Shown here one piece after another: positions 14,201 through 26,200 of a DNA stretch of 64,000 bases. The DNA is from Laetmonice hystrix (lineage: Eukaryota): NCBI GenBank assembly GCA_965235115.1, contig OZ249436.1, positions 10,602,001 to 10,666,000 of the forward strand, in the 5' to 3' direction. The translations under genes and the position numbers were made by a program. Within the stretch, counting starts at the first letter, position 1, and each line of letters begins with the position of its first letter. The notes under the pieces were generated by a model. It did no database searches and was not told the DNA's origin. It worked only from the letters and a program-made list of their open reading frames with translations.

Positions 14201-17200
14201 GGGTGGCACAGATATAGATCGCACTGAACAACAGAACTCCGTGCACCTGCCACCGTTCATGAACTAATCGGTCACAACAGTCTGGTTCACTCAACCTGAC
14301 CAATATTTTGCGTCTGAAGAACTGTGACATTCCGCCGCCTCTACCCAACCACCCGCGTGACGTCAAGGGGGAGTGTCACTTCCCGGCCAATCACGCTGTC
14401 GCTAGTCGGTGAACCGACTCACTGATAAACTCGGCCTGAGGGAAAACACAGACACGAGGCCAATTGTTGTGCTCAGATCAGTGTCAACAAGTATTTTAGA
14501 TACCACCATCCCCCAACCACCCGCCACCTACCCTCAGACATATAGGTCTAGTTCGATCTACAAAATGTAGGCCTATGTAATGTAAGCCCTAGAAAGGGGC
14601 CGTCAGGAGAGGATCCAGAACTTTAGAGATCGGGTAGGGGGGAATCTGGCAAGGTGGTCAACATGGTCAACTTTAAAAGATCAAAACCCGTGGGTGGATA
14701 CAAAATGAATGCATGACTGGATCTAAACCCGTGGATGGATACAAAATGAATGCATGCGGGTTGTTTACATTTCAACTTATTTGTCCACGCCACACCCCTA
14801 CATCTCCCCCCCCCTCTCTCTCTCTTCACCCCTTCTCTCTCAAAAATGACAATAAATCCCGTTTACCACAATCGTCCAAAATTGTACTGAAATCCCGTAG
14901 TCCGATGATTGGTACCATGTCAGACAGTGCGGCCATTGATCAATCAATGATAAGTACCACGTCCAATGTCCGACCGACCTACAGAGAACGTATGCTAGCT
15001 GCCCTCCCTCCGAGAAATAGTCCGGCCCGTCACGTGGTTACGGTAACGTCCCATTCACACACACCCATACGCACATCTATAAATATGTGGCCCACGTGGA
15101 ACCTCTCACAAACACTGGATGTCAAGTAAAGTCACTAACCAAACGTTGCGCCATTTATTCACTTATTCCAACAGTGTGTTGAAAAAAGGCGTCGTCACCC
15201 ATGTGAAGCCTGACTTTGATTTCATATCCATCGGACTGAACATTATAAGCCTGGAACAACTTTACCACTTGGAGGTTCTGCTTAAGTGTCTCTCGGTCGT
15301 GCCGCCTGAAGTGCGTTTTACTACAGATTTACTACAATTTGTACGCTGCCTACTCAGTCTTGTCAATGGACTGCCAGTCAGTGGCGTACCCGTCACGTAT
15401 GTATTACGTTCACCAGCTCCAGACTCTGGTCGCTATCGTGGTTGGCATCTGCGCCGTATCGACAGAAGGTAGGCCCTGTAAAACATTCTGTTGCACATTG
15501 TAGCCGTGGCCACCTTTTTCATATATTGCTATAATACAACATAGGCTTATTGTGAGTAATACTCCGTGTGTATGGTTATACTTATAAATTATGGGGAATA
15601 TGTCACTAAGTTGATATGCCCTATATGTATCGAAGTAATGTATAGGCCGTATGTGTATTAAGATGGTCAAGGTGGCAAAGCTAACATATTTTTGGTATAA
15701 GCCATCAACGATTTTTCTCGCCAACAACTGAGAGTTCAGAGCGCTGCAATGTGTGATGGACATACAATAGCCAAATGTCAGTGTACGGCCGGGAGTGACA
15801 ACGTCCAAGCAATATTTTAGCCTGTGCGTGTACGCTGTCCAGAATTTGGGCAAAATGCCAGCAGACGGATACGGTTTCGTTTTGCGACGGCCCACATTAT
15901 AGGTCTACAGTTCGGCAATTGTCCTGATATGGTTCACTGGTTTGTTGTTGCGTCTTTTGCTCATCGAGACAGTTCGTAGCGCCACCTGTAGGCAGGTGTT
16001 TACCCTGGACGTAACCGTTGACCGGTGTCAGGGTGATGTCGGTGATGGCACATGATCATTGAGACGTATCTAGAGTGAGTAATTGCCGGTCATGTCAGGC
16101 CGACCGTTCCGAGGTAATGACTCGTTTGTGAGATCACCACCTCCCACTCCGGCCGGACCACACAAACCAACACCAACGAATCACGACGGTGTTCCGCTCA
16201 CCTGCGCTCTGACCCGATGCTTGCATCGGATCATCGACACGCCCTCTATTCAAACGAAACGGCCCAAATGTCCACCCGGGAGAAATGTCGAAGACTGCGT
16301 TTTGTTAGTGGATCCGCACAATAAAACACAGGCTGTAAATCAGTTACCTTTAAGTGCCCGTCGTATTATGCCGGGAAGCCCATGGCGAAGGGAAGCGATG
16401 TCATATTTTCTATAAACCACTTATTGGTGCGTGCTGTCGGTCGCGGGTCACTCAGTGCAGAGCATCACAACACGTAGCCATGTGGTGTGGTTGATACGGA
16501 AGNNNNNNNNNNNNNNNNNNNNNNNNNNNNNNNNNNNNNNNNNNNNNNNNNNNNNNNNNNNNNNNNNNNNNNNNNNNNNNNNNNNNNNNNNNNNNNNNNN
16601 NNNNNNNNNNNNNNNNNNNNNNNNNNNNNNNNNNNNNNNNNNNNNNNNNNNNNNNNNNNNNNNNNNNNNNNNNNNNNNNNNNNNNNNNNNNNNNNNNNNN
16701 AACGCGAAGAAAATTTTCATTCTGTTTCTGCAGATCGCGCGAGAAGAGAAATCGCGAGAAATCGCGAGAAATCGCGAGAGTTGGCCGTATGGGCGCCGCC
16801 ATCTTTGTTAGGGTCGCCCGAACGAGTGGCCAGGGTCTGTCAGCGGCCGTGAACGAGGAGGCCGCCCCGCTGGGTCTGTTGGCGGGCCTCGCTGGAACGG
16901 CCGCCCGGTGCCCGAGGGCAAGCCACGCCGGGCGTGCGTAGTCTGTTCCTGTCTGACTCTGATCTATATAGAGTGCAAAACTGCGTTGATAAGGCAGGCC
17001 TAAATATGATCAGATATCTCTTTCAGATGCATATACTATAGGCCCCTAGATGATGATATCTGGATTCAGTTCTTATTGTATGGTAGGCCTAATAGATCTA
17101 TTCTAGGCCTACATTTCATTTCTGCTTGCACATCTATAGCTGCGTTAGACGCCCGGGACCGCGGGGCACATGTGCCTCGATAGGCCTAACTGACGGTCGC

Positions 17201-20200
17201 TGTCAGAGATATAGGGGCCTAGGCCTAGGCCTATGTGCGACATTAGGCCTAGCGTAATTTTAAAATCCAATGGCAATGCTTCTTGGGCACAGACCAGTTC
17301 ATGTTCAGGTTCACTATTTTCGGGTCGTATTGACCAATTTTATTGATATAGATCCAGTGGCGGATCCAGGAGGGTGCAGAGGGGGCGCACCTTCCATCTC
17401 GCCCGAAGTGCCCTTTTCTCTCCTCCCGTGCCCTTTTTTATTTTTACGAAAGATTTTTAAAATTTAAATTTCCAATGGTCTTGGCCTAATTAATTTTTTT
17501 TTCTGGGGGAGGGCCCCCCCCCCCATTCATGGCTTCGCGCTTTCGGCGCTCGCATCATGGGGGACACCCCCTTTACCAAATTCCTGGATCCGCCCTTGAC
17601 TGCCCCCAAATTTCTAACTAGGCCTAGGCCTACGGCCCCTAGCTGTTAGATCTATGTGCATAGGCTATATGCCACTTTTATTTGACTGTTTAGGCTACTC
17701 ACTGGGGGGGGGGGGCGGTTTGAGAAATTGCCCTTTTTCCATAGCACCCCCCCCCCCCCGGTCTTGAAAATCCTGGATCCGCCCCTCTGTACTGTAGATC
17801 TAGTGAGTAGGCCTAGGCTATAGAGTCTAGATCTAGGCCTAGGGCCTATTTTTCACAAGCTATTAGGCCTAGTAGGCGGATTTAGGGGGGCACAGGGGTC
17901 CCCCGAAATTTTCAAAGGCAGGGTTTTGGTCCTCCTATAGGCCTACTGAGGCCTTCTGAGTGAGGGAAACAAAATAGTCTACAGCCTACAGGGGCGGATC
18001 CAGGATTTTTTTTTTTTTTGGGGGGGGGGGGGGGGGCACAGGTGTTGGCGGACGAATGGACCCATCGCTACCTGACATGATGCCGGGCAAGGGTCACTCA
18101 GTGGGGGGCGGGGGGGGGGCAAACCCCTGCTTTTGAAAAATTTCACAGGCCCCCTGTGCCCCCCCCCCCTAAATCCGCCACTGGCTACCATTAGGTCAAG
18201 TCGGAGAATACACGAGTTTAAAAATAACACTTCGTCACAATCTAAGCCTCGTTTTGAAGTTGCGAGTAAACAAGCCATGCAGCGGCGTCCACGAAGCCAC
18301 TATTCCACAACCGGGAAGTAAAGTTGCGACAGATTTTTCTGGCTGTGATCTTACAGATACACATGGAGGGTAGTCCGACATGTGCAGGCCTAACACATTG
18401 TGTGAAGCGCTGTGCATGTCGGACTACAGGCTGTCGATGTGGCCGTGAAGCAAGCGCAGCCGGGCTGCGGCCGGCAGTGTGCAGACTGTCAAGTCAGTGT
18501 GTCAGCGGGCCGTACCCGGCTTGACTCATCCTCCCCCTCCACTCGAACGCCTAAAATGTCAATCAACATCCGACTGTCCCCTAATTTGTATCCCGCATGT
18601 GTGGAAAACCATGTACGGACCCCCGTCTTCCCCCAGCGGTAGACCGGCCGCCCGGCATGCGCTCTGTCGAACCAAAGATCTATGAATGGTCGAACTATAA
18701 TCAACTGGTGTACTAAATGCAATATGGCGGCGCCCATGCCACCAACTCTCGCGATTTCTCGCCTCTTCTCGTCTCGCGAGNNNNNNNNNNNNNNNNNNNN
18801 NNNNNNNNNNNNNNNNNNNNNNNNNNNNNNNNNNNNNNNNNNNNNNNNNNNNNNNNNNNNNNNNNNNNNNNNNNNNNNNNNNNNNNNNNNNNNNNNNNNN
18901 NNNNNNNNNNNNNNNNNNNNNNNNNNNNNNNNNNNNNNNNNNNNNCGTAGGTTGACTTGGCAGCAGACGATCCAAGCTGGACAAGCTGCGGGGGGGAGGA
19001 CATTGGAAGCAGTCTAAAAGCATGCCGACACAGGGGGTGCTCAGAGATTTGCTCACGGAAACAACAGATAGAAGAAAGCAAAAAAAGAAATAGAAAGGGG
19101 GTTTCCTTTCTTATCGATTGTTTGGCTAGGACATGGCCCATCTCGAAGATTCCCAATATAGGCCTAACCGTGTTTTGTAGCAATGAAAACACTCTTTTCC
19201 GTAGTGTCCTATAGGCTAAATGTTTTTTTTAAAGTTCCACAATGCAGCACTTATTTGTTTCTGATGCCTATCTTTTTCAGCGGGACTATGCTGGATGGTG
19301 ATGGGGTCGAGCGGCCTTTGCCGTGACTTGCTGGACATAGGCGTTACCCGCGAGCAGTGCTGCAGGGGCGGTGACGTGGACCGATCGTGGAGTCCACAAA
19401 CTAACCTTTCGGGGGGAATACTCTTCTACTGGCAAGCGTTTGGTGGTGGCGCACCGCAGTGTCAGCGGTGTCGAGGTGAGTGACACGCCTTCAGGCTCTT
19501 TATGACAAAAAAAGTGAACCACAAACACATTATTTTCTCTGGTTTCCAGCAGGGGCTGACGTGGGGCACTGAATGTGGATACCTGAATTATTGGGGTGGG
19601 GGGTTGGGGAGGGGGGCGTTTTCAGCTCAGTTGAAGCATACGATGCTCGGGAGGGAAAAATAAATTTTGCTCTGGGTATAGTTGACACCTCTCTAATAAG
19701 ACTGTTAACTCTCATTTGTCGTTCACCATTTTCCCTACCTTTTGCCCTTTAAATGTTGTATTTAGATACTGGTGGTAGACATTCATAGTTTTATATGTCA
19801 CGAAGTGGTTGGCCCTGGTGTTCTATGTCTCACATCTTCGTCACCCGTCTTAAACCTTATCCCATCGTCCTTCAGACAACACAGTTTCACAATCACCAGG
19901 TCAGTGATTGCCTATACCTTATGAAAAGACTTCTGTGCCTTATATTCCGTATTGTCCGTCGTGCCCATTTCTAGGTGAGCCATCCCTGGTGTCCTCGGAG
20001 AGGGGAGTTGATGAGGATGATGAGAATTTGGGTGTCACATACGAAGACTATGAGTCTTCGGAGCTGACAAAAAACCTGGGTTCTGGAGGTGAGCAGCTCC
20101 CCTCTCGCTATAAGTGGCTGAAGTAAGACACTGGGGAAAACGAAGAAGAAAAAAAGGAAAACATATACACAGCTTATTAAGAACCGCTTTGAAACTGTGT

Positions 20201-23200
20201 TGATGCTACTAATGCTAGGATTGATTTTGTTGAACCAATATAAGTGTTTAGTCTCCGAGGCCAGTTTGGATAGAGCCAAGCTTTTTGACATGGCTTTTTG
20301 TCCTTTACAGCATGTTTCACAGATGTGCAGTACGGATTTGCGCAGTACTATTGTAGGCCTACGTTTTGTCACTGTGATGAATGCTTCCACGTTGATCCTC
20401 GGCTTTCAAATGATTCAAGTATCACTGACAACAACGATCAAGGAAATGAGTGCCCCAGCTTTTATTGATGACCATCTCAAATTTGGTTGTAATAATCTGT
20501 TTTCAGAAATATGAAGAACTTTATGTAAAATGATGTCTATATTAGTCGCTCTTTTAAATTAATGAAGAAGAAAAATGACAGATTGTGTGTCACTGATTGG
20601 TCAAAGGCAACCCCTATCGTTTATGGGTCAAAACAAACTGCACAAGTCACGCACCTTTCAAGTATGCTGTATGTGAGTTGGTGTATTGTAGTATGCATTC
20701 GCTTCCTTCCTATTGTATTCTGCCTACCGAACAATGCTGAAATAGGTCTCCTCATGTTGTCAAAAGCATGACGTTATGTACTGGAAACATGATATGCTCT
20801 CGCATGACCTGCTTCCTCATTCCACATCTTCTGTAAAATTAATTTGGAATGTTTGAGTAACCGTGTAACTTTAGAGTGAGCACAACAGGAATGCCACCCT
20901 TTCTCTGCGGCTGTACTCGATTGGGCACGGACCAACGCTAGAATATTTCTCGAATTCCTGTTCAGAAGGCAGTAAAAGTGTTAATGTCCGAAAAAGAAAC
21001 CTTTTCTTTTCAATGAGACACAACTATGTGGACCAGTTACCATATACCAAGTGACAATTTATTCGCACTGTCTTTACGAAATTAATGTAAAATCATACAT
21101 ATCCATGGACCTTACCATTAATGACACGTATTTTCTTACTACGTTTTGCCCTTACACCAATAGAGAGGTGTCGGTAAAAGGGGTGGGGGCCATGCCCCCT
21201 AATACCTCTAGAGCCGCCCCTGTCAAGGCATAGGTTGACCAGAGATGGACGGCTCCTGGCTTCAGGCTCGGTCCCCACATCTATCAGTAACTTCCGATAC
21301 CCCTGCAATGGTTTTAAGAGCTGATCAGAAACAGGGACGTAGGTAGGGAGGGCACGATTTTTAATAGATCTCCAAAAATAATGAATATTTGATGGTATCA
21401 CAATCTATTGAACTGCAAAATACATAGATATCGTAGGCCTATATGAAACTGGTATAGGCCTATATATCTGTATTCAGTCGTTACCCTTTTTATGGACTTG
21501 TCACTTAATGTCCTAGTGCCGTGCTTCGCCCCCTACATTTCTAAGGTGTGCCTAACCAGATTCAAAAATATTGCGAATCACGCACCTTGTATGCACAAGT
21601 ATGCTGTATGCTGTAGGGGCAGACTGAACAATGCGTTTAGAGGGTCCACGACTTGTCTATGCGGGCACAATGACGTTGTAACGGCCAAAATGGGTCCTTG
21701 TAAAAACGGCACTTAATTAACCACGTTAGGTACGGCCCTGCTTTTTGTAGCACAATGCCAGCTATGACCTTTTGCGATAACCTATGTAAGGTCATTGCGA
21801 ACGAATGCGAGTATGATCTACATGTAAATTACAGTCAACTGCAGCTTTCCTGAGGCTCCCAATTTACTGAGTTAACCATTAACATTCGTGGACAACTGGC
21901 AGGCGCGCGGGGGCATTCTTGTGGGGGTTCGGGGTAGAAAATCGAGATTGAAGGTATAATTTTTAGAGGACACGGCCTGCAGACATGGCCTGGACAATAT
22001 AGAACAAAAAGAATAGTAGGCTACATCCGTGCAGTGTGCGGCTGGCCAACCGCAACGAGTGACGGCAGCTCTTCAGCATCATCCTCAGTCGTCGTATATT
22101 GAGACAGGAAGTCGTCGTTACTGACACCCAAAGTGCAGATATCAGCTGGCCTGAATATCTATATAGGCCCCTAATATGCTTCATTTCTATTCTGATAAGA
22201 AATGCTAAAGACTTTTTAGGTTCGGGTTGTTTTTATCCATCTTAAAATCAATTATTGGTTTATGACTAGGCCTCATTCTGGAACTGCAACCAATGCAATG
22301 TATAGTTTGGCGCAATGACGTATTTCTTGGTTTTTACTTTGGTTGTACAGACACTTGTGAGGGCGTCAACTGTGGGAGGGGCAAAAAGTGTCGGATGCGC
22401 CGTGGCCAGCCTCGATGTGTTTGCGCCCCCGATTGTTCCCAGCAACACTTGCGCCACCGAGGTTCTGTCTGTGGAAGTGACGGACGAACTTACCGGAATC
22501 ACTGCTCTATGCTTAAATTCAACTGTAGACACAACAAGAACATCCAACTCAACTATTACGGAAAATGCAAGCGTAAGTATATGCCTATATACATAACGGT
22601 ACGTCTGTTCTGAGAAAAAGTTTAACTTTAAGTAGACTCCACGAGGGAGAGCATAATAAGTTTAAGATAGTCCCTTCTTCCAGAACCTTAAAACAATGAT
22701 TTTTTGGATGTTTGTGTGTGTGTGTTTTTTTTTTTTGTTTTTTTTGTTTTTTTTTGGGGGGGGGGGCGCTCGGAGAATACGTTCTTATCCCCTCGCCCTG
22801 AACTGTGCCTGGATGTTTGTGGGGGGGGGGGGGGGGGGGGGTGTTGGGGTTGGGGGGGGGGGGGTGTCAAACTGATACATTATTATGTCCTGTCGGGTTA
22901 ATTGACTCACGTCTCCTTGCTATAGATGTGCACTTTTTCATAACATAATGAATGCAGATATAAAGGGGAGTAGGCCTATACTCTATCATCCACCAAATTG
23001 ACCGGATGACTGAATGTTTTTCTTATTGATTCTGGTAACACATCCTATGAATAGACAGCTGTGAAATTCCCCTGTTGGTGGGGAAATTACAAAAACTAGC
23101 TGAAGTGCCCACAAACACGATGAATGGCACCATTTGCAATCGTTTGAACGTTGTGTTATTGTGGTCTAAATCAACCCCAAAGATCGAGGACGACACTCGA

Positions 23201-26200
23201 GACAACACTCGAGACTTGATATCCTACTAGGCCTGGGTGGACTGATTTCCTCAAGAAAAATGACATTAGGCTACACGTTCAGAAGATTATCGTTCTATTG
23301 GCCCCTTAAAGTGACAAGTAGGCCTACGTCACATCATGTGTCAGTGGGTAGCAATCTTACGGCATTGATGAGTTCCAGTAAAGATTATTACTTGCCCGTT
23401 ATCAGAGTGCCAGCCTACCACCTGTACTGATCACTGATCACTACGGCTAATGTGAGCACGGTGATGTGAGCCAGGCTAGCTGTAACGACCAGCCGCGGCC
23501 GGCCGGCCAGCCAGTCTGTGCAGTGCAGCGACAGGATCCGTGAACCGAGAGGGTTAGCGGGCGCAGTGCACGGACGCTTGCTATTGGCTGACAGGACGAC
23601 GCCAGACATGTACTCAGAGGACATCCCCAGACAAACTGACCCTGCCCAGACGGACAGTCAGTTCTACAGCTGAAGGCGAAACGCAGTTCTTCTCTAATTA
23701 TAGAAGTTTCCCGCCATCACATGTCTACAGGACACGGAAAGAACCGAATACACCCGAGCCGAGCGTCACCCCTGTCACGATTATATATGCACTCTATGGA
23801 AACGTCAATGATTTGTCAACTTGACGAAGGTTACAAAGTGCGTGGACGAGTCAAGACTAGTAGGCCTTAGCTAAGTTAGAGAAGGAAGGGAGGGAGGGCT
23901 CGTACGAACCCCAAGTACAGCAGAGTAGGCCAAGGCCCCCATAGGTCTATTCTATTATTTGTGTGCGAAAAAGAAGAGAAAACTATGTGCCCCATAGAGA
24001 CATCCGTTGTTGTAGAGATCCTATGTCCCTGACACGAGCTAGCGACCTAGAACATGGTGAATATTATTGAACGAGGAATCACGGAGGGAGAATGTGGTGA
24101 AGGTTGGCACCTCCACGTGTGCCAACTACATAGCGAGGACTCCTACTTAAAAAAGAGCGAGAAAAAAAAGGACTTGCGTCACTGCCTTGATTTCGATCTG
24201 GGCCAACACCTGTGTGACACCCGACATAGAAGGTGTTTATGAACGTGCACTGGTTGTTAAGTCAGAACTATGCAATTCGTGACCTTGTAAAGCGCCTTTT
24301 TTATGCTCAACAAAATCGTGTTTCATCTCATGTTCAGTTATGCCAATGGCAATTTCCATTGGGGCCCTAATGAGGAACGTTTCATAACGAAACTGGTATA
24401 ATTATGTGGGTCGAGTCGTAAAGCAGTTGTGAATTTTGTTCAGGACAGGTTAATATAACTTAGTCTGGCTACATAAAGTTCAGTGACGTAGCCATAGGGC
24501 GTACCCGGCGTACGCCCCCCGTTTGGCTTCTCTTTTCTTTTTCTTTTTTTGCATTGTTAAAGACCTTTTTTTTGCTTGTCAGATTTTCCTTAAAAAAATT
24601 TACGCCCTCCTTTACGCCCCCCCTTTCACTAACCTAGTCTAATTCCTGGCTACGTCACTGAGGTTATGTGATATCATAACAGGCCTATCCGAACTATCTT
24701 ACATGTGTTATTAAAGGATATTGCTAATACAAAAAATATGCTGTGTAGCTATACATCCTGATACTATTCTTTTTGCGACATATTGGCCAGGATTTAAACG
24801 TGTCATGTGGTTATGTATTACCAGGTTCCTGTCTGGAGGTGCGGTGTGGCGCTGACAAGTTTTGCGTGGCCGACCAATACGGGCTGCCACACTGTGTGAC
24901 GTGCAGCATGCGCTGCCCGTCTTCGTCGACCCTCGACAGACCCGTCTGCGGCACGAACGCTATCACCTACCCGAGTCTCTGCCACTTCCGAGAGATGTCC
25001 TGTCGGCAAGGCTCCGGCGTTACGATAGCCTACCTTGGACCTTGCCGAGGTAGGAATTAAGCTTAAGCATTCAAAATGCAATATACATTAAAAAGAAAGC
25101 AAAGCCATGAATATAGTAATAGTTATGAGGTTAAAAAGCTCGTAACTAAGAAAAAGAGCACGGACCAAGGACAGCCTCCCGTTGGACTCTTTAGCATAGT
25201 TCCATTTCAATTTTTTTTTGGGGGGGGGGGGGATTAGGCACGGTAGGAAAAGATCCACACCTGTTGTTCTCCCGGAAGGTTTTCCATGAAAAATGAAAGA
25301 AAGAAAGATGAATCATAGTAACTTCCAATCCAAACTTGGAGAGGAACTTTTAGAAAGTTGTATTCTCTGTCTTGAAGATGGCGTGACCTGTGCCAACCTG
25401 ACCTGCCAGCCTCACCAACGCTGCCTTGTGGACCCTTGGACAGGGCGGCCGCAGTGCAGTAACTGTAACACAGAGAGCATGTGCCGCTACATGGAGTCAA
25501 GCACAGCAGGTCCCATCTGTGGAACGGATAGCAACACATACACGTCCTGGTGCAAAATGCTGGAAACAAGCTGTAGTCAAGGCATCGTCATCAAAACACT
25601 ACACAACGGGGCCTGCCATCGTGAGTTCGCATATTTCGAGTTCGTGGTTCGTCAACAACTACGGTGGCTGGGAAAGGACATGCAACAAATAATTTTTTCG
25701 TTTTCCCGACTTTTCACTTCCGTTTTCCCGACTTTTCACTTCTGTTGTCCTGACTTTCTTTTGCATTTGTTGAAAAAAAGTCGGGGGAAAAAAATGTCAA
25801 CAAAATACAAAAAAAGTCAGGGAAGCGGAAGTGAATAGTCAGGAAAACGAAAGTGAAAAGTTGGGAAAACGAAAAAATATTTTTTTTGCATGTCCTTTCC
25901 CAGCCACCGTAAATAACGATAAACTCAGAGGGAAAAAGTAAGATAAAATTCGTACTTTCAGCAATCGTAATTCATGACCACGGTATTGGAAAAATATTCT
26001 TGCGCAATTCAGTTCAAAAGTTAACAATTTGGTGAAGAATCCTGTTAAAAATAACACGAGGTCGCATTTAGGTCGTATTTACCAAGATATTACCTGCCGG
26101 TTTTTTTTTATTAGTTACTTCGTTGTTCTAGCATCGTCCCTTTCAAAGCGTAGCTAGGTGTTAACCTGTTTAACTTCTCCGTTGCTGAGAGACGGTTTTG

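What the first reader, a model, noticed from the sequence alone, without database searches (positions are those of the whole stretch)
19975..20088. Candidate recursive-splice exon that inserts a 38-aa acidic linker into follistatin
Seen: intron 2 contains a 114-nt phase 1-1 cassette (CATTTCTAG|GTGAGC...GGAG|GTGAGC). It adds GEPSLVSSERGVDEDDENLGVTYEDYESSELTKNLGSG (11 acidic, 2 basic residues) in frame between the N-terminal domain and FS domain 1. Its first six bases are GTGAGC, so joining it to exon 2 (..CGAG) rebuilds a 5' splice site nearly identical to the native exon-2 donor (CGAG|GTGAGT). Established: AG|GT..AG junctions are the signature of recursive splicing and RS-exons; vertebrate FST has no exon here; the acidic tail of FS315 masks the basic heparin-binding site in FS domain 1. 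Inference: a splice switch gives a canonical 341-aa form or a 379-aa form whose acidic patch (possible sulfotyrosines in YEDYE, possible Ser-Gly GAG site) sits next to GKKCRMRR. This could be an independent route to cell-bound versus diffusible follistatin.
Basis: partly seen in the sequence, partly recalled or inferred. Interest (0 to 1): 0.82.

Follow-up and report, generated by a model that had tools for sequence, protein, structure and literature searches.

The report
Likely extra acidic exon in follistatin
Inside an intron of an invertebrate follistatin gene lies a 114-base stretch that looks like a real, frame-keeping optional exon adding a very acidic 38-residue linker. No RNA data could be found to show it is used, and it is absent from the same intron in four other lophotrochozoans.

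Summary
Window 19975-20088 is a 114-nt phase 1-1 open frame, TCTAG|GTGAGC...GGAG|GTGAGC, in the 2875-nt intron 2 of a follistatin gene. I rebuilt both the 341-aa and the 379-aa model.

It is more than a chance pseudo-exon:
- Its splice-site scores sit within the range of the gene's real sites. It ranks 4th of 24 open phase 1-1 candidates in 128 kb, above three real exons.
- Its codon log-odds are in the top 0.14% of stop-free non-coding windows.
- Its synonymous codon choice alone equals the coding mean (top 3.4% of the null).
- It is single-copy and is not part of a tandem repeat.
- Joining it to exon 2 rebuilds GAG|GTGAGC, the same nine bases as its own donor. It therefore meets the sequence definition of a putative RS-exon, as in Ubx m1/m2 and the EJC-repressed RS-exons.

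Against it:
- No RNA run holds it, or even the follistatin exons.
- No close relative was reachable for comparison.
- 100 of 104 homologues have a 3-residue ND-FS1 linker.
- The orthologous intron of Capitella, Lingula, Pinctada and Mizuhopecten has nothing like it.

Verdict: probably (about 0.5) a lineage-specific alternative exon of RS-exon design. Recursive splicing and heparin-site masking are untested.

The parts
15366..15468 (+). Follistatin exon 1: start codon and signal peptide (MDCQ...VAIVVGICAVSTE), donor AAG|GTAGGC, phase 1
   Evidence: Found by a scan for ATG-started hydrophobic ORFs ending at a phase-1 donor. It completes the 341-aa model. Inferred, with no RNA support.
19281..19475 (+). 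Exon 2: follistatin N-terminal domain, ending CGAG|GTGAGT (PWM donor 11.5)
   Evidence: Pfam FST_N 2.1e-19. tblastn with Lingula follistatin. Splice scores.
19938..19974 (+). Candidate 3' splice region of the cassette: pyrimidine-rich tract, CTTAT branch-like motif about 33 nt upstream, and TCTAG acceptor (PWM 3.69; the gene's real acceptors score 0.69-7.05)
   Evidence: Sequence. Scores. Codon log-odds here are -0.40 per codon, non-coding-like even though the frame is open.
19975..20088 (+). The 114-nt phase 1-1 cassette encoding (G)EPSLVSSERGVDEDDENLGVTYEDYESSELTKNLGSG. Purine-rich core GATGAGGATGATGAGAA.
   Evidence: Single copy in the 627-Mb genome. Codon log-odds 14.7 bits, top 0.14% of the non-coding null. 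Synonymous-only score 4.4, equal to the coding mean. No variant in three DNA runs, but that test had no power.
19975..19980 (+). GTGAGC at the cassette's 5' end. Joined to exon 2 it gives GAG|GTGAGC, a regenerated (recursive) 5' splice site with PWM 9.93.
   Evidence: The nine bases are identical to those of the cassette's own donor.
20086..20094 (+). Cassette donor GAG|GTGAGC (PWM 9.93; the gene's real donors score 5.8-11.5)
   Evidence: Only 9 donors this strong occur per strand in the 64 kb.
22351..22572 (+). Exon 3: FS domain 1 with the basic stretch GRGKKCRMRRGQPRC, the counterpart of the vertebrate heparin-binding sequence
   Evidence: tblastn 58% identity to Lingula FS1. Sequence. The heparin-binding role is inferred from vertebrate follistatin.
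24825..25049 (+). Exon 4: FS domain 2, phase 1-1
   Evidence: Kazal_2 1.6e-11. Boundaries.
25378..25620 (+). Exon 5: FS domain 3, phase 1-1
   Evidence: Kazal_2 5.5e-8. Boundaries.
25904..25941 (+). Putative last coding exon, giving the tail PTVNNDKLRGKK and a stop. There is no acidic tail.
   Evidence: Best acceptor after exon 5 (PWM 6.26). It gives the 341-aa model. Inferred only.

Best explanation
Window 19975-20088 is most likely a genuine, lineage-restricted, frame-preserving exon of the follistatin gene. It is probably included in only part of the transcripts. It belongs to the "RS-exon" design, in which the exon begins with a 5' splice-site motif.

Proposed mechanism:
- The exon is defined by its own acceptor (19974) and donor (20089) and is spliced to exon 2.
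- That junction reads GAG|GTGAGC, which is identical to the cassette's own donor.
- The next step can use either donor. The downstream donor gives inclusion and a 379-aa protein. The regenerated donor gives re-splicing and skipping, and the canonical 341-aa protein.
- Direct exon 2 to exon 3 splicing gives the same 341-aa mRNA.

Consequence of inclusion: a disordered, strongly acidic 38-residue linker (net about -9) is placed between the N-terminal domain and FS domain 1. FS domain 1 carries the basic GKKCRMRR stretch. In my model the protein has no acidic C-terminal tail.

Shown: the sequence anatomy, the frame, the splice-signal strength, the coding-like codon usage and the single-copy status.
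Inferred: that it is spliced at all, that inclusion is alternative, that re-splicing occurs, and any effect on heparin or ligand binding.
For: - Sequence and frame are as described.
- Splice signals fall within or above the range of the gene's real sites: acceptor 3.69 against 0.69-7.05, donor 9.93 against 5.8-11.5.
- At those scores only real exon 2 and the cassette qualify in 128 kb. At the loosest thresholds it ranks 4th of 24, above real exons 3, 4 and 5.
- Codon log-odds, trained on 19 kinase-domain segments of this genome against the window's non-coding DNA, are 14.7 bits. That is the top 0.14% of 17,787 stop-free non-coding windows and the 74th percentile of coding windows. Only one other locus in 128 kb is as high.
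- The synonymous-only score is 4.4, equal to the coding mean, against a null mean of -3.4. It is in the top 3.4%.
- The signal switches from -0.40 to +0.39 per codon at the acceptor.
- The cassette is not a repeat or a junction minisatellite.
- DNA contigs span exon 2, cassette and exon 3 in this order.
- The four orthologous introns yield no false candidates under the same scan.
- Expressed RS-exons are a documented class: Ubx m1/m2, and thousands of putative ones in mammals (PMC8605326, PMC6224609).
- In Lingula an acidic Tyr-rich tail segment (DAFNVDYYDAS) is itself optional, through an alternative acceptor.
Against: - No RNA evidence at all. No RNA run holds the cassette or the flanking exons, and no transcript-derived follistatin of this species or a close relative is in the protein collections.
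- 100 of 104 homologues have exactly three residues between the last ND cysteine and the first FS1 cysteine. None has an acidic insert.
- Capitella, Lingula, Pinctada and Mizuhopecten have no comparable exon in intron 2.
- The splice PWM is a generic, vertebrate-like one written from memory.
- The codon model rests on 11.8 kb of one protein family, and the null on a single 64-kb window.
- Acidity inflates the total codon score.
- Polymorphism data had no power.
Confidence: 0.5

Rival explanations
1. It is a chance pseudo-exon. An acidic, purine-rich open frame in the intron happens to be flanked by good AG and GT sites, but it is never, or only as noise, spliced into mRNA.
For: - No RNA support.
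- Nothing similar in 104 homologues or in four orthologous introns.
- At loose thresholds about 17 non-follistatin open phase 1-1 candidates occur in 128 kb, which is roughly 0.4 per 2.9-kb intron.
- The scan's readers look at very many introns, so rare coincidences are expected.
- Earlier notes say decoy splice sites are common in this repeat-rich genome.
Against: - The joint occurrence of top-ranked splice scores, a codon log-odds in the top 0.14% and coding-like synonymous usage is unlikely by chance. A rough estimate is below 1e-3 per intron.
- The cassette is not part of any tandem array.
Confidence: 0.28
2. It is a cryptic RS-exon (ratchet point). The site is recognised and spliced to exon 2 only as an intermediate, the regenerated donor is then always used, and the 114 nt never appear in mRNA.
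For: - The AG|GTGAGC juxtaposition is followed by a downstream donor 114 nt away, as at Drosophila ratchet points and vertebrate cryptic RS-exons (PMC8605326, PMC6224609).
- This reading fits the absence of any homologue with an insert.
Against: - The intron is only 2875 nt. Known ratchet points lie predominantly in long introns.
- Cryptic RS-exons are generally out of frame and not coding-like (PMC8605326). This one is in frame with coding-like codon usage.
- The regenerated donor is not stronger than the exon's own donor. Both score 9.93.
Confidence: 0.08
3. It is a constitutive exon. This species' follistatin always carries the acidic linker, and the 341-aa form is not made.
For: - The splice signals are as good as those of the constitutive exons.
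- In mammals most annotated RS-exons are constitutively included, because the exon junction complex represses the regenerated donor (PMC6224609).
Against: - The 3-residue ND-FS1 linker is kept in 100 of 104 homologues across Metazoa, which argues that a permanent 38-residue insert would be costly.
- The regenerated donor is strong (9.93).
Confidence: 0.07
4. It is an alternative last exon. Exon 2 splices to 19975, the donor is not used, and translation runs on to the stop at 20124-20126 (...GSGGEQLPSRYKWLK). The product is a short secreted protein made of the N-terminal domain plus an acidic tail.
For: - The frame stays open for 12 codons past the donor, and those codons are also coding-like at +0.35 per codon.
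- By blastp the cassette weakly resembles hymenopteran follistatin C-terminal tails. Only 1 of 300 shuffles reaches the score.
Against: - There is no + strand AATAAA or ATTAAA between 19665 and 24709.
- The donor at 20089 is strong.
- A profile of the hymenopteran tails does not single out the cassette (E 1.3, rank 2 of 2185 ORFs).
Confidence: 0.03
5. It is a relic of unrelated coding sequence, such as an old pseudogene or mobile-element fragment, or an exon of another overlapping gene. In that case its coding-like composition has nothing to do with follistatin.
For: - Earlier notes describe the genome as very repeat-rich.
- A high-copy repeat lies 1.1 kb away at 21208-21269.
- Coding-like composition alone does not say which gene it belongs to.
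Against: - The cassette is single copy at DNA and protein level in the whole genome.
- No Pfam hit on either strand and no protein in 5.8 billion shares words with it.
- No other recognisable gene lies near it.
- The coding-like signal starts exactly at the acceptor, and the frame matches follistatin's phase.
Confidence: 0.04

Closest known systems
Ultrabithorax microexons m1/m2 (re-splicing at exon-exon junctions; Hatton et al. 1998, as described in PMC8605326)
   Same: - It is a short, frame-preserving optional exon whose first bases form a 5' splice-site motif.
- Splicing to the upstream exon regenerates a donor.
- Choice between that donor and the exon's own donor gives skipping or inclusion.
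- Either way the product is a protein isoform differing by a linker between two functional parts.
   Different: - Ubx m1/m2 are 51 nt and lie in a roughly 73-kb intron, with re-splicing shown experimentally.
- Here the exon is 114 nt in a 2.9-kb intron, and nothing is shown at the RNA level.
Annotated (expressed) RS-exons repressed by the exon junction complex (Blazquez et al. 2018, PMC6224609)
   Same: It meets their sequence criterion: the exon-exon junction reconstitutes a 5' splice site scoring within the range of canonical donors. Incomplete repression is a known source of physiological alternative splicing.
   Different: Those were defined on annotated, RNA-supported exons with species-specific score thresholds. 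Here the exon itself is unconfirmed, and the threshold is taken from five donors and a generic PWM.
Vertebrate FS288/FS315 follistatin isoforms (alternative use of exon 6, the acidic C-terminal tail)
   Same: Alternative splicing would add or omit an acidic segment in a follistatin whose FS domain 1 carries a basic heparin-binding-type stretch. The rebuilt canonical protein is strongly basic with no acidic tail, like FS288.
   Different: - The segment is internal, between ND and FS1, and not C-terminal.
- It is not homologous by any test that held up.
- Binding effects are untested.
- No other follistatin examined has an insert at this junction.
Lingula anatina follistatin isoforms X1/X2 versus X3
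   Same: In a lophotrochozoan follistatin, an acidic, tyrosine-rich segment (DAFNVDYYDAS; compare VTYEDYESSE here) is optional through alternative splicing.
   Different: In Lingula it is an 11-residue piece of the C-terminal tail, removed by an alternative 3' acceptor within the last exon. Lingula intron 2 has no cassette.

Membership tests
Follistatin (FST) | N-terminal follistatin domain (Pfam FST_N) | tested here: met
   PF21333 E 2.1e-19, 69.9 bits, full length 1-63/63 on exon 2.
Follistatin (FST) | Three consecutive FS (FOLN + Kazal) domains, one per phase 1-1 exon | tested here: met
   tblastn of Lingula follistatin finds FS1, FS2 and FS3 in order. Kazal_2 hits on FS2 and FS3. The 294-aa core is 50-52% identical to Lingula and P0108 follistatins over its full length.
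Putative RS-exon (sequence definition of Blazquez et al. 2018) | Joining the exon to the preceding exon reconstitutes a 5' splice site scoring within the range of canonical donors | tested here: met
   GAG|GTGAGC scores 9.93 on a generic PWM. The gene's five canonical donors score 5.8-11.5. The threshold is approximate.
Putative RS-exon (sequence definition of Blazquez et al. 2018) | The exon is definable by its own 3' splice site and a downstream 5' splice site | tested here: met
   Acceptor 3.69 with a pyrimidine tract and a branch-like CTTAT. Donor 9.93, 114 nt downstream.
Recursive splicing (demonstrated) | RNA evidence of the intermediate and of use of the regenerated donor (junction reads, lariats, sawtooth pattern in nascent RNA) | not testable with these tools
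   No RNA run holds the stretch. Reads were laid on DNA contigs.
Intronic ratchet point (Drosophila type) | Location in a long intron, with poorly conserved, generally out-of-frame cryptic exon content | tested here: not met
   The intron is 2875 nt. The content is in frame and coding-like.
Alternative cassette exon | Length a multiple of three, with symmetric phase matching the flanking introns | tested here: met
   114 nt, phase 1-1. The 379-aa model has no internal stop.
Alternative cassette exon | Inclusion and skipping junctions both seen in mRNA | not testable with these tools
   No RNA data for this locus. No transcript-derived protein of this species in the databases.
Alternative cassette exon | Conservation of the frame and splice sites in related species | tested here: inconclusive
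   The exon is absent from intron 2 of four distant lophotrochozoans. No close relative was found in the protein, metagenome or run collections, so the informative comparison could not be made.
Follistatin acidic C-terminal tail (FS315 type) | Acidic segment encoded after FS domain 3 as the C-terminus | tested here: not met
   The segment lies between ND and FS1.
Follistatin acidic C-terminal tail (FS315 type) | Sequence homology to known follistatin tails | tested here: inconclusive
   blastp to hymenopteran tails scores 23.9 bits, reached by 1 of 300 composition-preserving shuffles. A profile of those tails gives E 1.3 and does not rank the cassette first.

The most novel reading that the evidence does not exclude
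This lineage has independently evolved the follistatin 'cell-bound versus diffusible' switch. In the rebuilt model the protein is very basic and has no acidic C-terminal tail. An internal acidic, probably tyrosine-sulfated linker is inserted next to the basic FS1 stretch by an RS-exon. Inclusion of that exon is set by competition between two identical donors, re-splicing against inclusion. The result would be an FS288-like and an FS315-like isoform, produced by a different exon and a different splicing mechanism than in vertebrates.
Probability: 0.12. Interest if true: 0.7.

Novelty: new variant of a known kind. Interest (0 to 1): 0.42.

Why it matters
Follistatin's architecture is among the most conserved of extracellular antagonists. 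That architecture is ND, a 3-residue link, and three FS domains. In vertebrates its bioavailability is set by an alternatively spliced acidic tail.

A second, independent way of adding an acidic module would be informative in three ways. The module would sit at the one junction that 100 of 104 homologues keep invariant.
- It would show that charge-based control of matrix binding is a recurrent solution.
- It would give a natural test of how much freedom the ND-FS1 hinge tolerates.
- It would add a protein-coding, short-intron example of an RS-exon outside flies and vertebrates.

If it is not expressed, it is a useful warning that a pseudo-exon can mimic several coding signals at once.

Tried and rejected
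1. RNA evidence. Two run searches, one with 3351 nt spanning exon 2 to exon 3 and one with the cassette alone, found only three DNA runs of one sample. Laying those runs confirmed the arrangement. They show about 34 variants in 3.7 kb and none in the cassette, where 0.5-1.2 were expected, so there was no power.
2. Relatives.
   - An exhaustive profile-free search with the ND exon found nothing above 52% identity.
   - Word-based searches with the cassette ORF and the ND exon found nothing.
   - A metagenome scan with the cassette ORF found nothing.
   - A metagenome scan with the ND exon gave two spurious loci that are not follistatin.
3. Homology of the cassette to follistatin acidic tails. 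The blastp result was suggestive but was not upheld by a profile search. Dropped.
4. Splice-junction minisatellite ("mirage") or other repeat origin. There is no tandem or dispersed repeat at the cassette.
5. Long-range RNA pairing of the cassette with the downstream intron. This concerned the inverted repeat 20027-20049 / 22110-22132. The duplex energy is not beyond shuffles, 29 of 200.
6. Antisense ORF 19971-20390. No family hit.
7. Rfam on 15-27 kb. Nothing.
8. Alternative last exon. No poly(A) signal for 4.5 kb.
9. A search for an acidic tail exon downstream of exon 5. None found.
10. The full spliced proteins were not sent to search, folding or complex tools.
Full report
**The observation**

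- Exon 2 of a + strand follistatin gene ends GTCGAG|gtgagt at 19475.
- At 19973-19974 an AG follows a pyrimidine-rich tract.
- The next 114 bases (19975-20088) start GTGAGC, end GGAG and are followed by gtgagc.
- Exon 3 starts at 22351.
- Read with the G left over from exon 2, the stretch encodes GEPSLVSSERGVDEDDENLGVTYEDYESSELTKNLGSG. That is 11 acidic and 2 basic residues.
- It leaves a G that joins AC of exon 3, so the frame is kept.

**The gene**

Exon 2 is a full-length Pfam FST_N domain (2e-19). tblastn with Lingula follistatin finds FS1, FS2 and FS3 in order at 22.3, 24.8 and 25.4 kb. I set the boundaries by eye and found a signal-peptide exon at 15366-15468 and a likely last exon at 25904. 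All introns are phase 1. The 294-aa core is 52% identical to a Logan transcript protein (P0108) and 50% to Lingula anatina follistatin. The animal is therefore a lophotrochozoan-like invertebrate with no close relative in the protein collections.

**Is it more than chance? Three partly independent lines say yes.**

*Splice signals.* On a simple PWM the acceptor scores 3.69, against 0.69-7.05 for the gene's real acceptors. The donor scores 9.93, against 5.8-11.5 for the real donors. At those scores, only real exon 2 and the cassette qualify as open phase 1-1 exons on both strands of the 64-kb window. At the weakest real-site thresholds there are 24 candidates. The cassette ranks 4th, above real exons 3, 4 and 5. 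The same scan finds no candidate in the orthologous intron of four other species.

*Codon composition.* I trained a log-odds table on 19 non-redundant kinase-domain segments from this genome against the window's non-coding DNA.
- The cassette scores 14.7 bits. That is the top 0.14% of 17,787 stop-free non-coding windows of the same length, and the 74th percentile of coding windows.
- Only one other locus in 128 kb scores as high.
- The signal is -0.40 per codon in the 22 open codons before the acceptor and +0.39 inside the cassette.

*Synonymous codon choice alone.* This measure is not driven by acidity. The cassette scores 4.4, equal to the coding mean, against a null mean of -3.4. It is in the top 3.4%.

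Further points:
- The stretch is single-copy at DNA and protein level in the 627-Mb genome.
- It is not part of any tandem array. That matters because earlier notes describe many splice-junction minisatellites in this genome.
- DNA contigs from three runs of one sample cross exon 2, cassette and exon 3 without a break, so the arrangement is not an assembly artefact.

**What could not be shown**

*RNA.* No RNA run holds the 3.35-kb stretch, or even the 114 bases alone. Earlier notes of this scan say one RNA data set exists for the species. It evidently does not contain assembled follistatin, so its silence says nothing.

*Relatives.* No follistatin above 52% identity exists in the 1.8-billion representative library. 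Word-based searches with the cassette ORF and with exon 2 found nothing. Metagenome scans gave nothing usable. Frame and site conservation in near relatives, the decisive comparative test, was therefore impossible.

*Polymorphism.* There are 34 variants in 3.7 kb and none in the cassette, which has no power.

**What the distant comparison says**

Among 104 homologues with a recognisable ND-FS1 junction, 100 have exactly three residues between the last ND cysteine and the first FS1 cysteine. The four exceptions are a pattern-matching artefact, two inserts that look like retained intron (they start with the G of the donor), and one 6-residue insert.

I fetched the follistatin loci of Capitella, Lingula, Pinctada and Mizuhopecten. 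Their intron 2 is about 50 to 1850 nt. It contains no acidic open frame, no phase 1-1 candidate and no tblastn match to the cassette.

If real, the exon is lineage-specific, and it sits at a junction that is otherwise almost invariant. That argues against constitutive inclusion and in favour of an optional isoform, or else of no function.

**The recursive-splicing reading**

Joined to exon 2, the cassette gives GAG|GTGAGC. These are the same nine bases as its own donor, and they score higher than four of the gene's five canonical donors. That satisfies the published sequence definition of a putative RS-exon (PMC6224609).

The closest precedent is Ubx m1/m2. There, optional coding microexons are removed by re-splicing at the regenerated donor, and donor competition, exonic elements and the exon junction complex set the outcome (PMC8605326). 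Such exons are not rare. Mammals may have thousands, most of them constitutively included because the EJC represses the regenerated donor (PMC6224609, PMC8605326).

The design is therefore known, and by itself it does not show that re-splicing happens. The intron is only 2.9 kb, unlike the long introns where ratchet points are typical. Cryptic RS-exons are usually out of frame and not coding-like (PMC8605326), and this one is neither. If it is used, it belongs with the expressed RS-exons. An earlier, unchecked note reports an expressed RS-type microexon in an RBMS gene of this same genome.

**Function**

In the rebuilt model the mature protein is very basic (about +18, pI 8.9) and ends PTVNNDKLRGKK, with no acidic tail. 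The cassette halves the net charge. No acidic open frame follows exon 5.

In vertebrates the acidic tail of FS315 lowers heparin and cell-surface binding by the basic stretch of FS domain 1. That is established knowledge; the FS288/FS315 tail difference is as stated in PMC7326492. Here the stretch GKKCRMRR lies just after the insertion point.

In Lingula an acidic Tyr-rich tail segment is itself optional through an alternative acceptor.

An FS288/FS315-like switch by another route is thus plausible, but it is inference throughout. So are sulfation of YEDYE and a Ser-Gly GAG site.

**Rejected leads**
- A resemblance to hymenopteran follistatin tails did not survive a profile test.
- An alternative-last-exon model lacks any poly(A) signal for 4.5 kb.
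- RNA pairing of the cassette with the downstream intron is not beyond shuffles.
- The antisense ORF and Rfam gave nothing.

**Verdict**

- About 0.5 that this is a real, optional, lineage-specific follistatin exon of RS-exon design.
- About 0.28 that it is an unused pseudo-exon.
- The remainder is split among a cryptic RS intermediate, a constitutive exon, an alternative last exon and an unrelated coding relic.

It is a new variant of known kinds, both an RS-type cassette exon and a charge-switching follistatin isoform. A single RT-PCR across exons 2 and 3 would settle it.

Noticed in passing
window 16500-16720 and 18750-18950 (intron 1): Two masked N stretches lie in intron 1. Both are flanked by related sequence containing the short tandem unit GCGAGAAATC (for example 16740-16775), so they look like two copies of one repeated element. 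The masked letters were not looked up.
   Followed up: no
window 16789-16941 (+): A GC-rich ATG-started ORF (MGAAIFVRVARTSGQGLSAAVNEEAAPLGLLAGLAGTAA...) lies next to the first masked stretch. It has the highest coding-like codon score of any unannotated window in the 128 kb searched (20.5 bits). It could be a CpG-island artefact, part of the repeat, or an alternative first exon. Lingula follistatin has alternative first exons.
   Followed up: no
window 21208-21269 (intron 2): A roughly 60-nt C-rich element reaches a summed word depth of about 1200-2000 in the DNA runs, against 30-60 for its surroundings. Many unrelated contigs end in it. It is a high-copy dispersed repeat.
   Followed up: no
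window 19665-24709 (+): There is no AATAAA or ATTAAA on the + strand for 5 kb across introns 2 and 3 of follistatin, although the window averages about one per 0.85 kb on that strand. This fits avoidance of premature polyadenylation inside the gene. Significance was not tested.
   Followed up: partly
window 20027-20049 and 22110-22132: A 23-nt inverted repeat, 83% complementary, lies between the middle of the cassette and a site 240 nt upstream of exon 3. By duplex energy against shuffles it is not beyond chance.
   Followed up: yes
L036 14261-14820 (Lingula anatina follistatin locus): Lingula isoform X3 drops the acidic, tyrosine-rich DAFNVDYYDAS from the C-terminal tail. It does so by using an alternative acceptor (GCTTCAG|GC) 33 nt inside the last exon. 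Isoforms X1 and X2 differ in their first exon.
   Followed up: partly
window 25621-25838 (+): The frame stays open for 72 codons past the exon 5 donor. This differs from vertebrate FST, where read-through gives the short FS288 end. Intron 5 retention here would add a long hydrophobic tail.
   Followed up: no
proteins P0011, P0113, P0120, P0127, P0141, P0143, P0161: Mollusc follistatins carry long, strongly basic C-terminal tails (runs of K/R) instead of acidic ones. Tail charge is therefore highly variable among lophotrochozoans.
   Followed up: no
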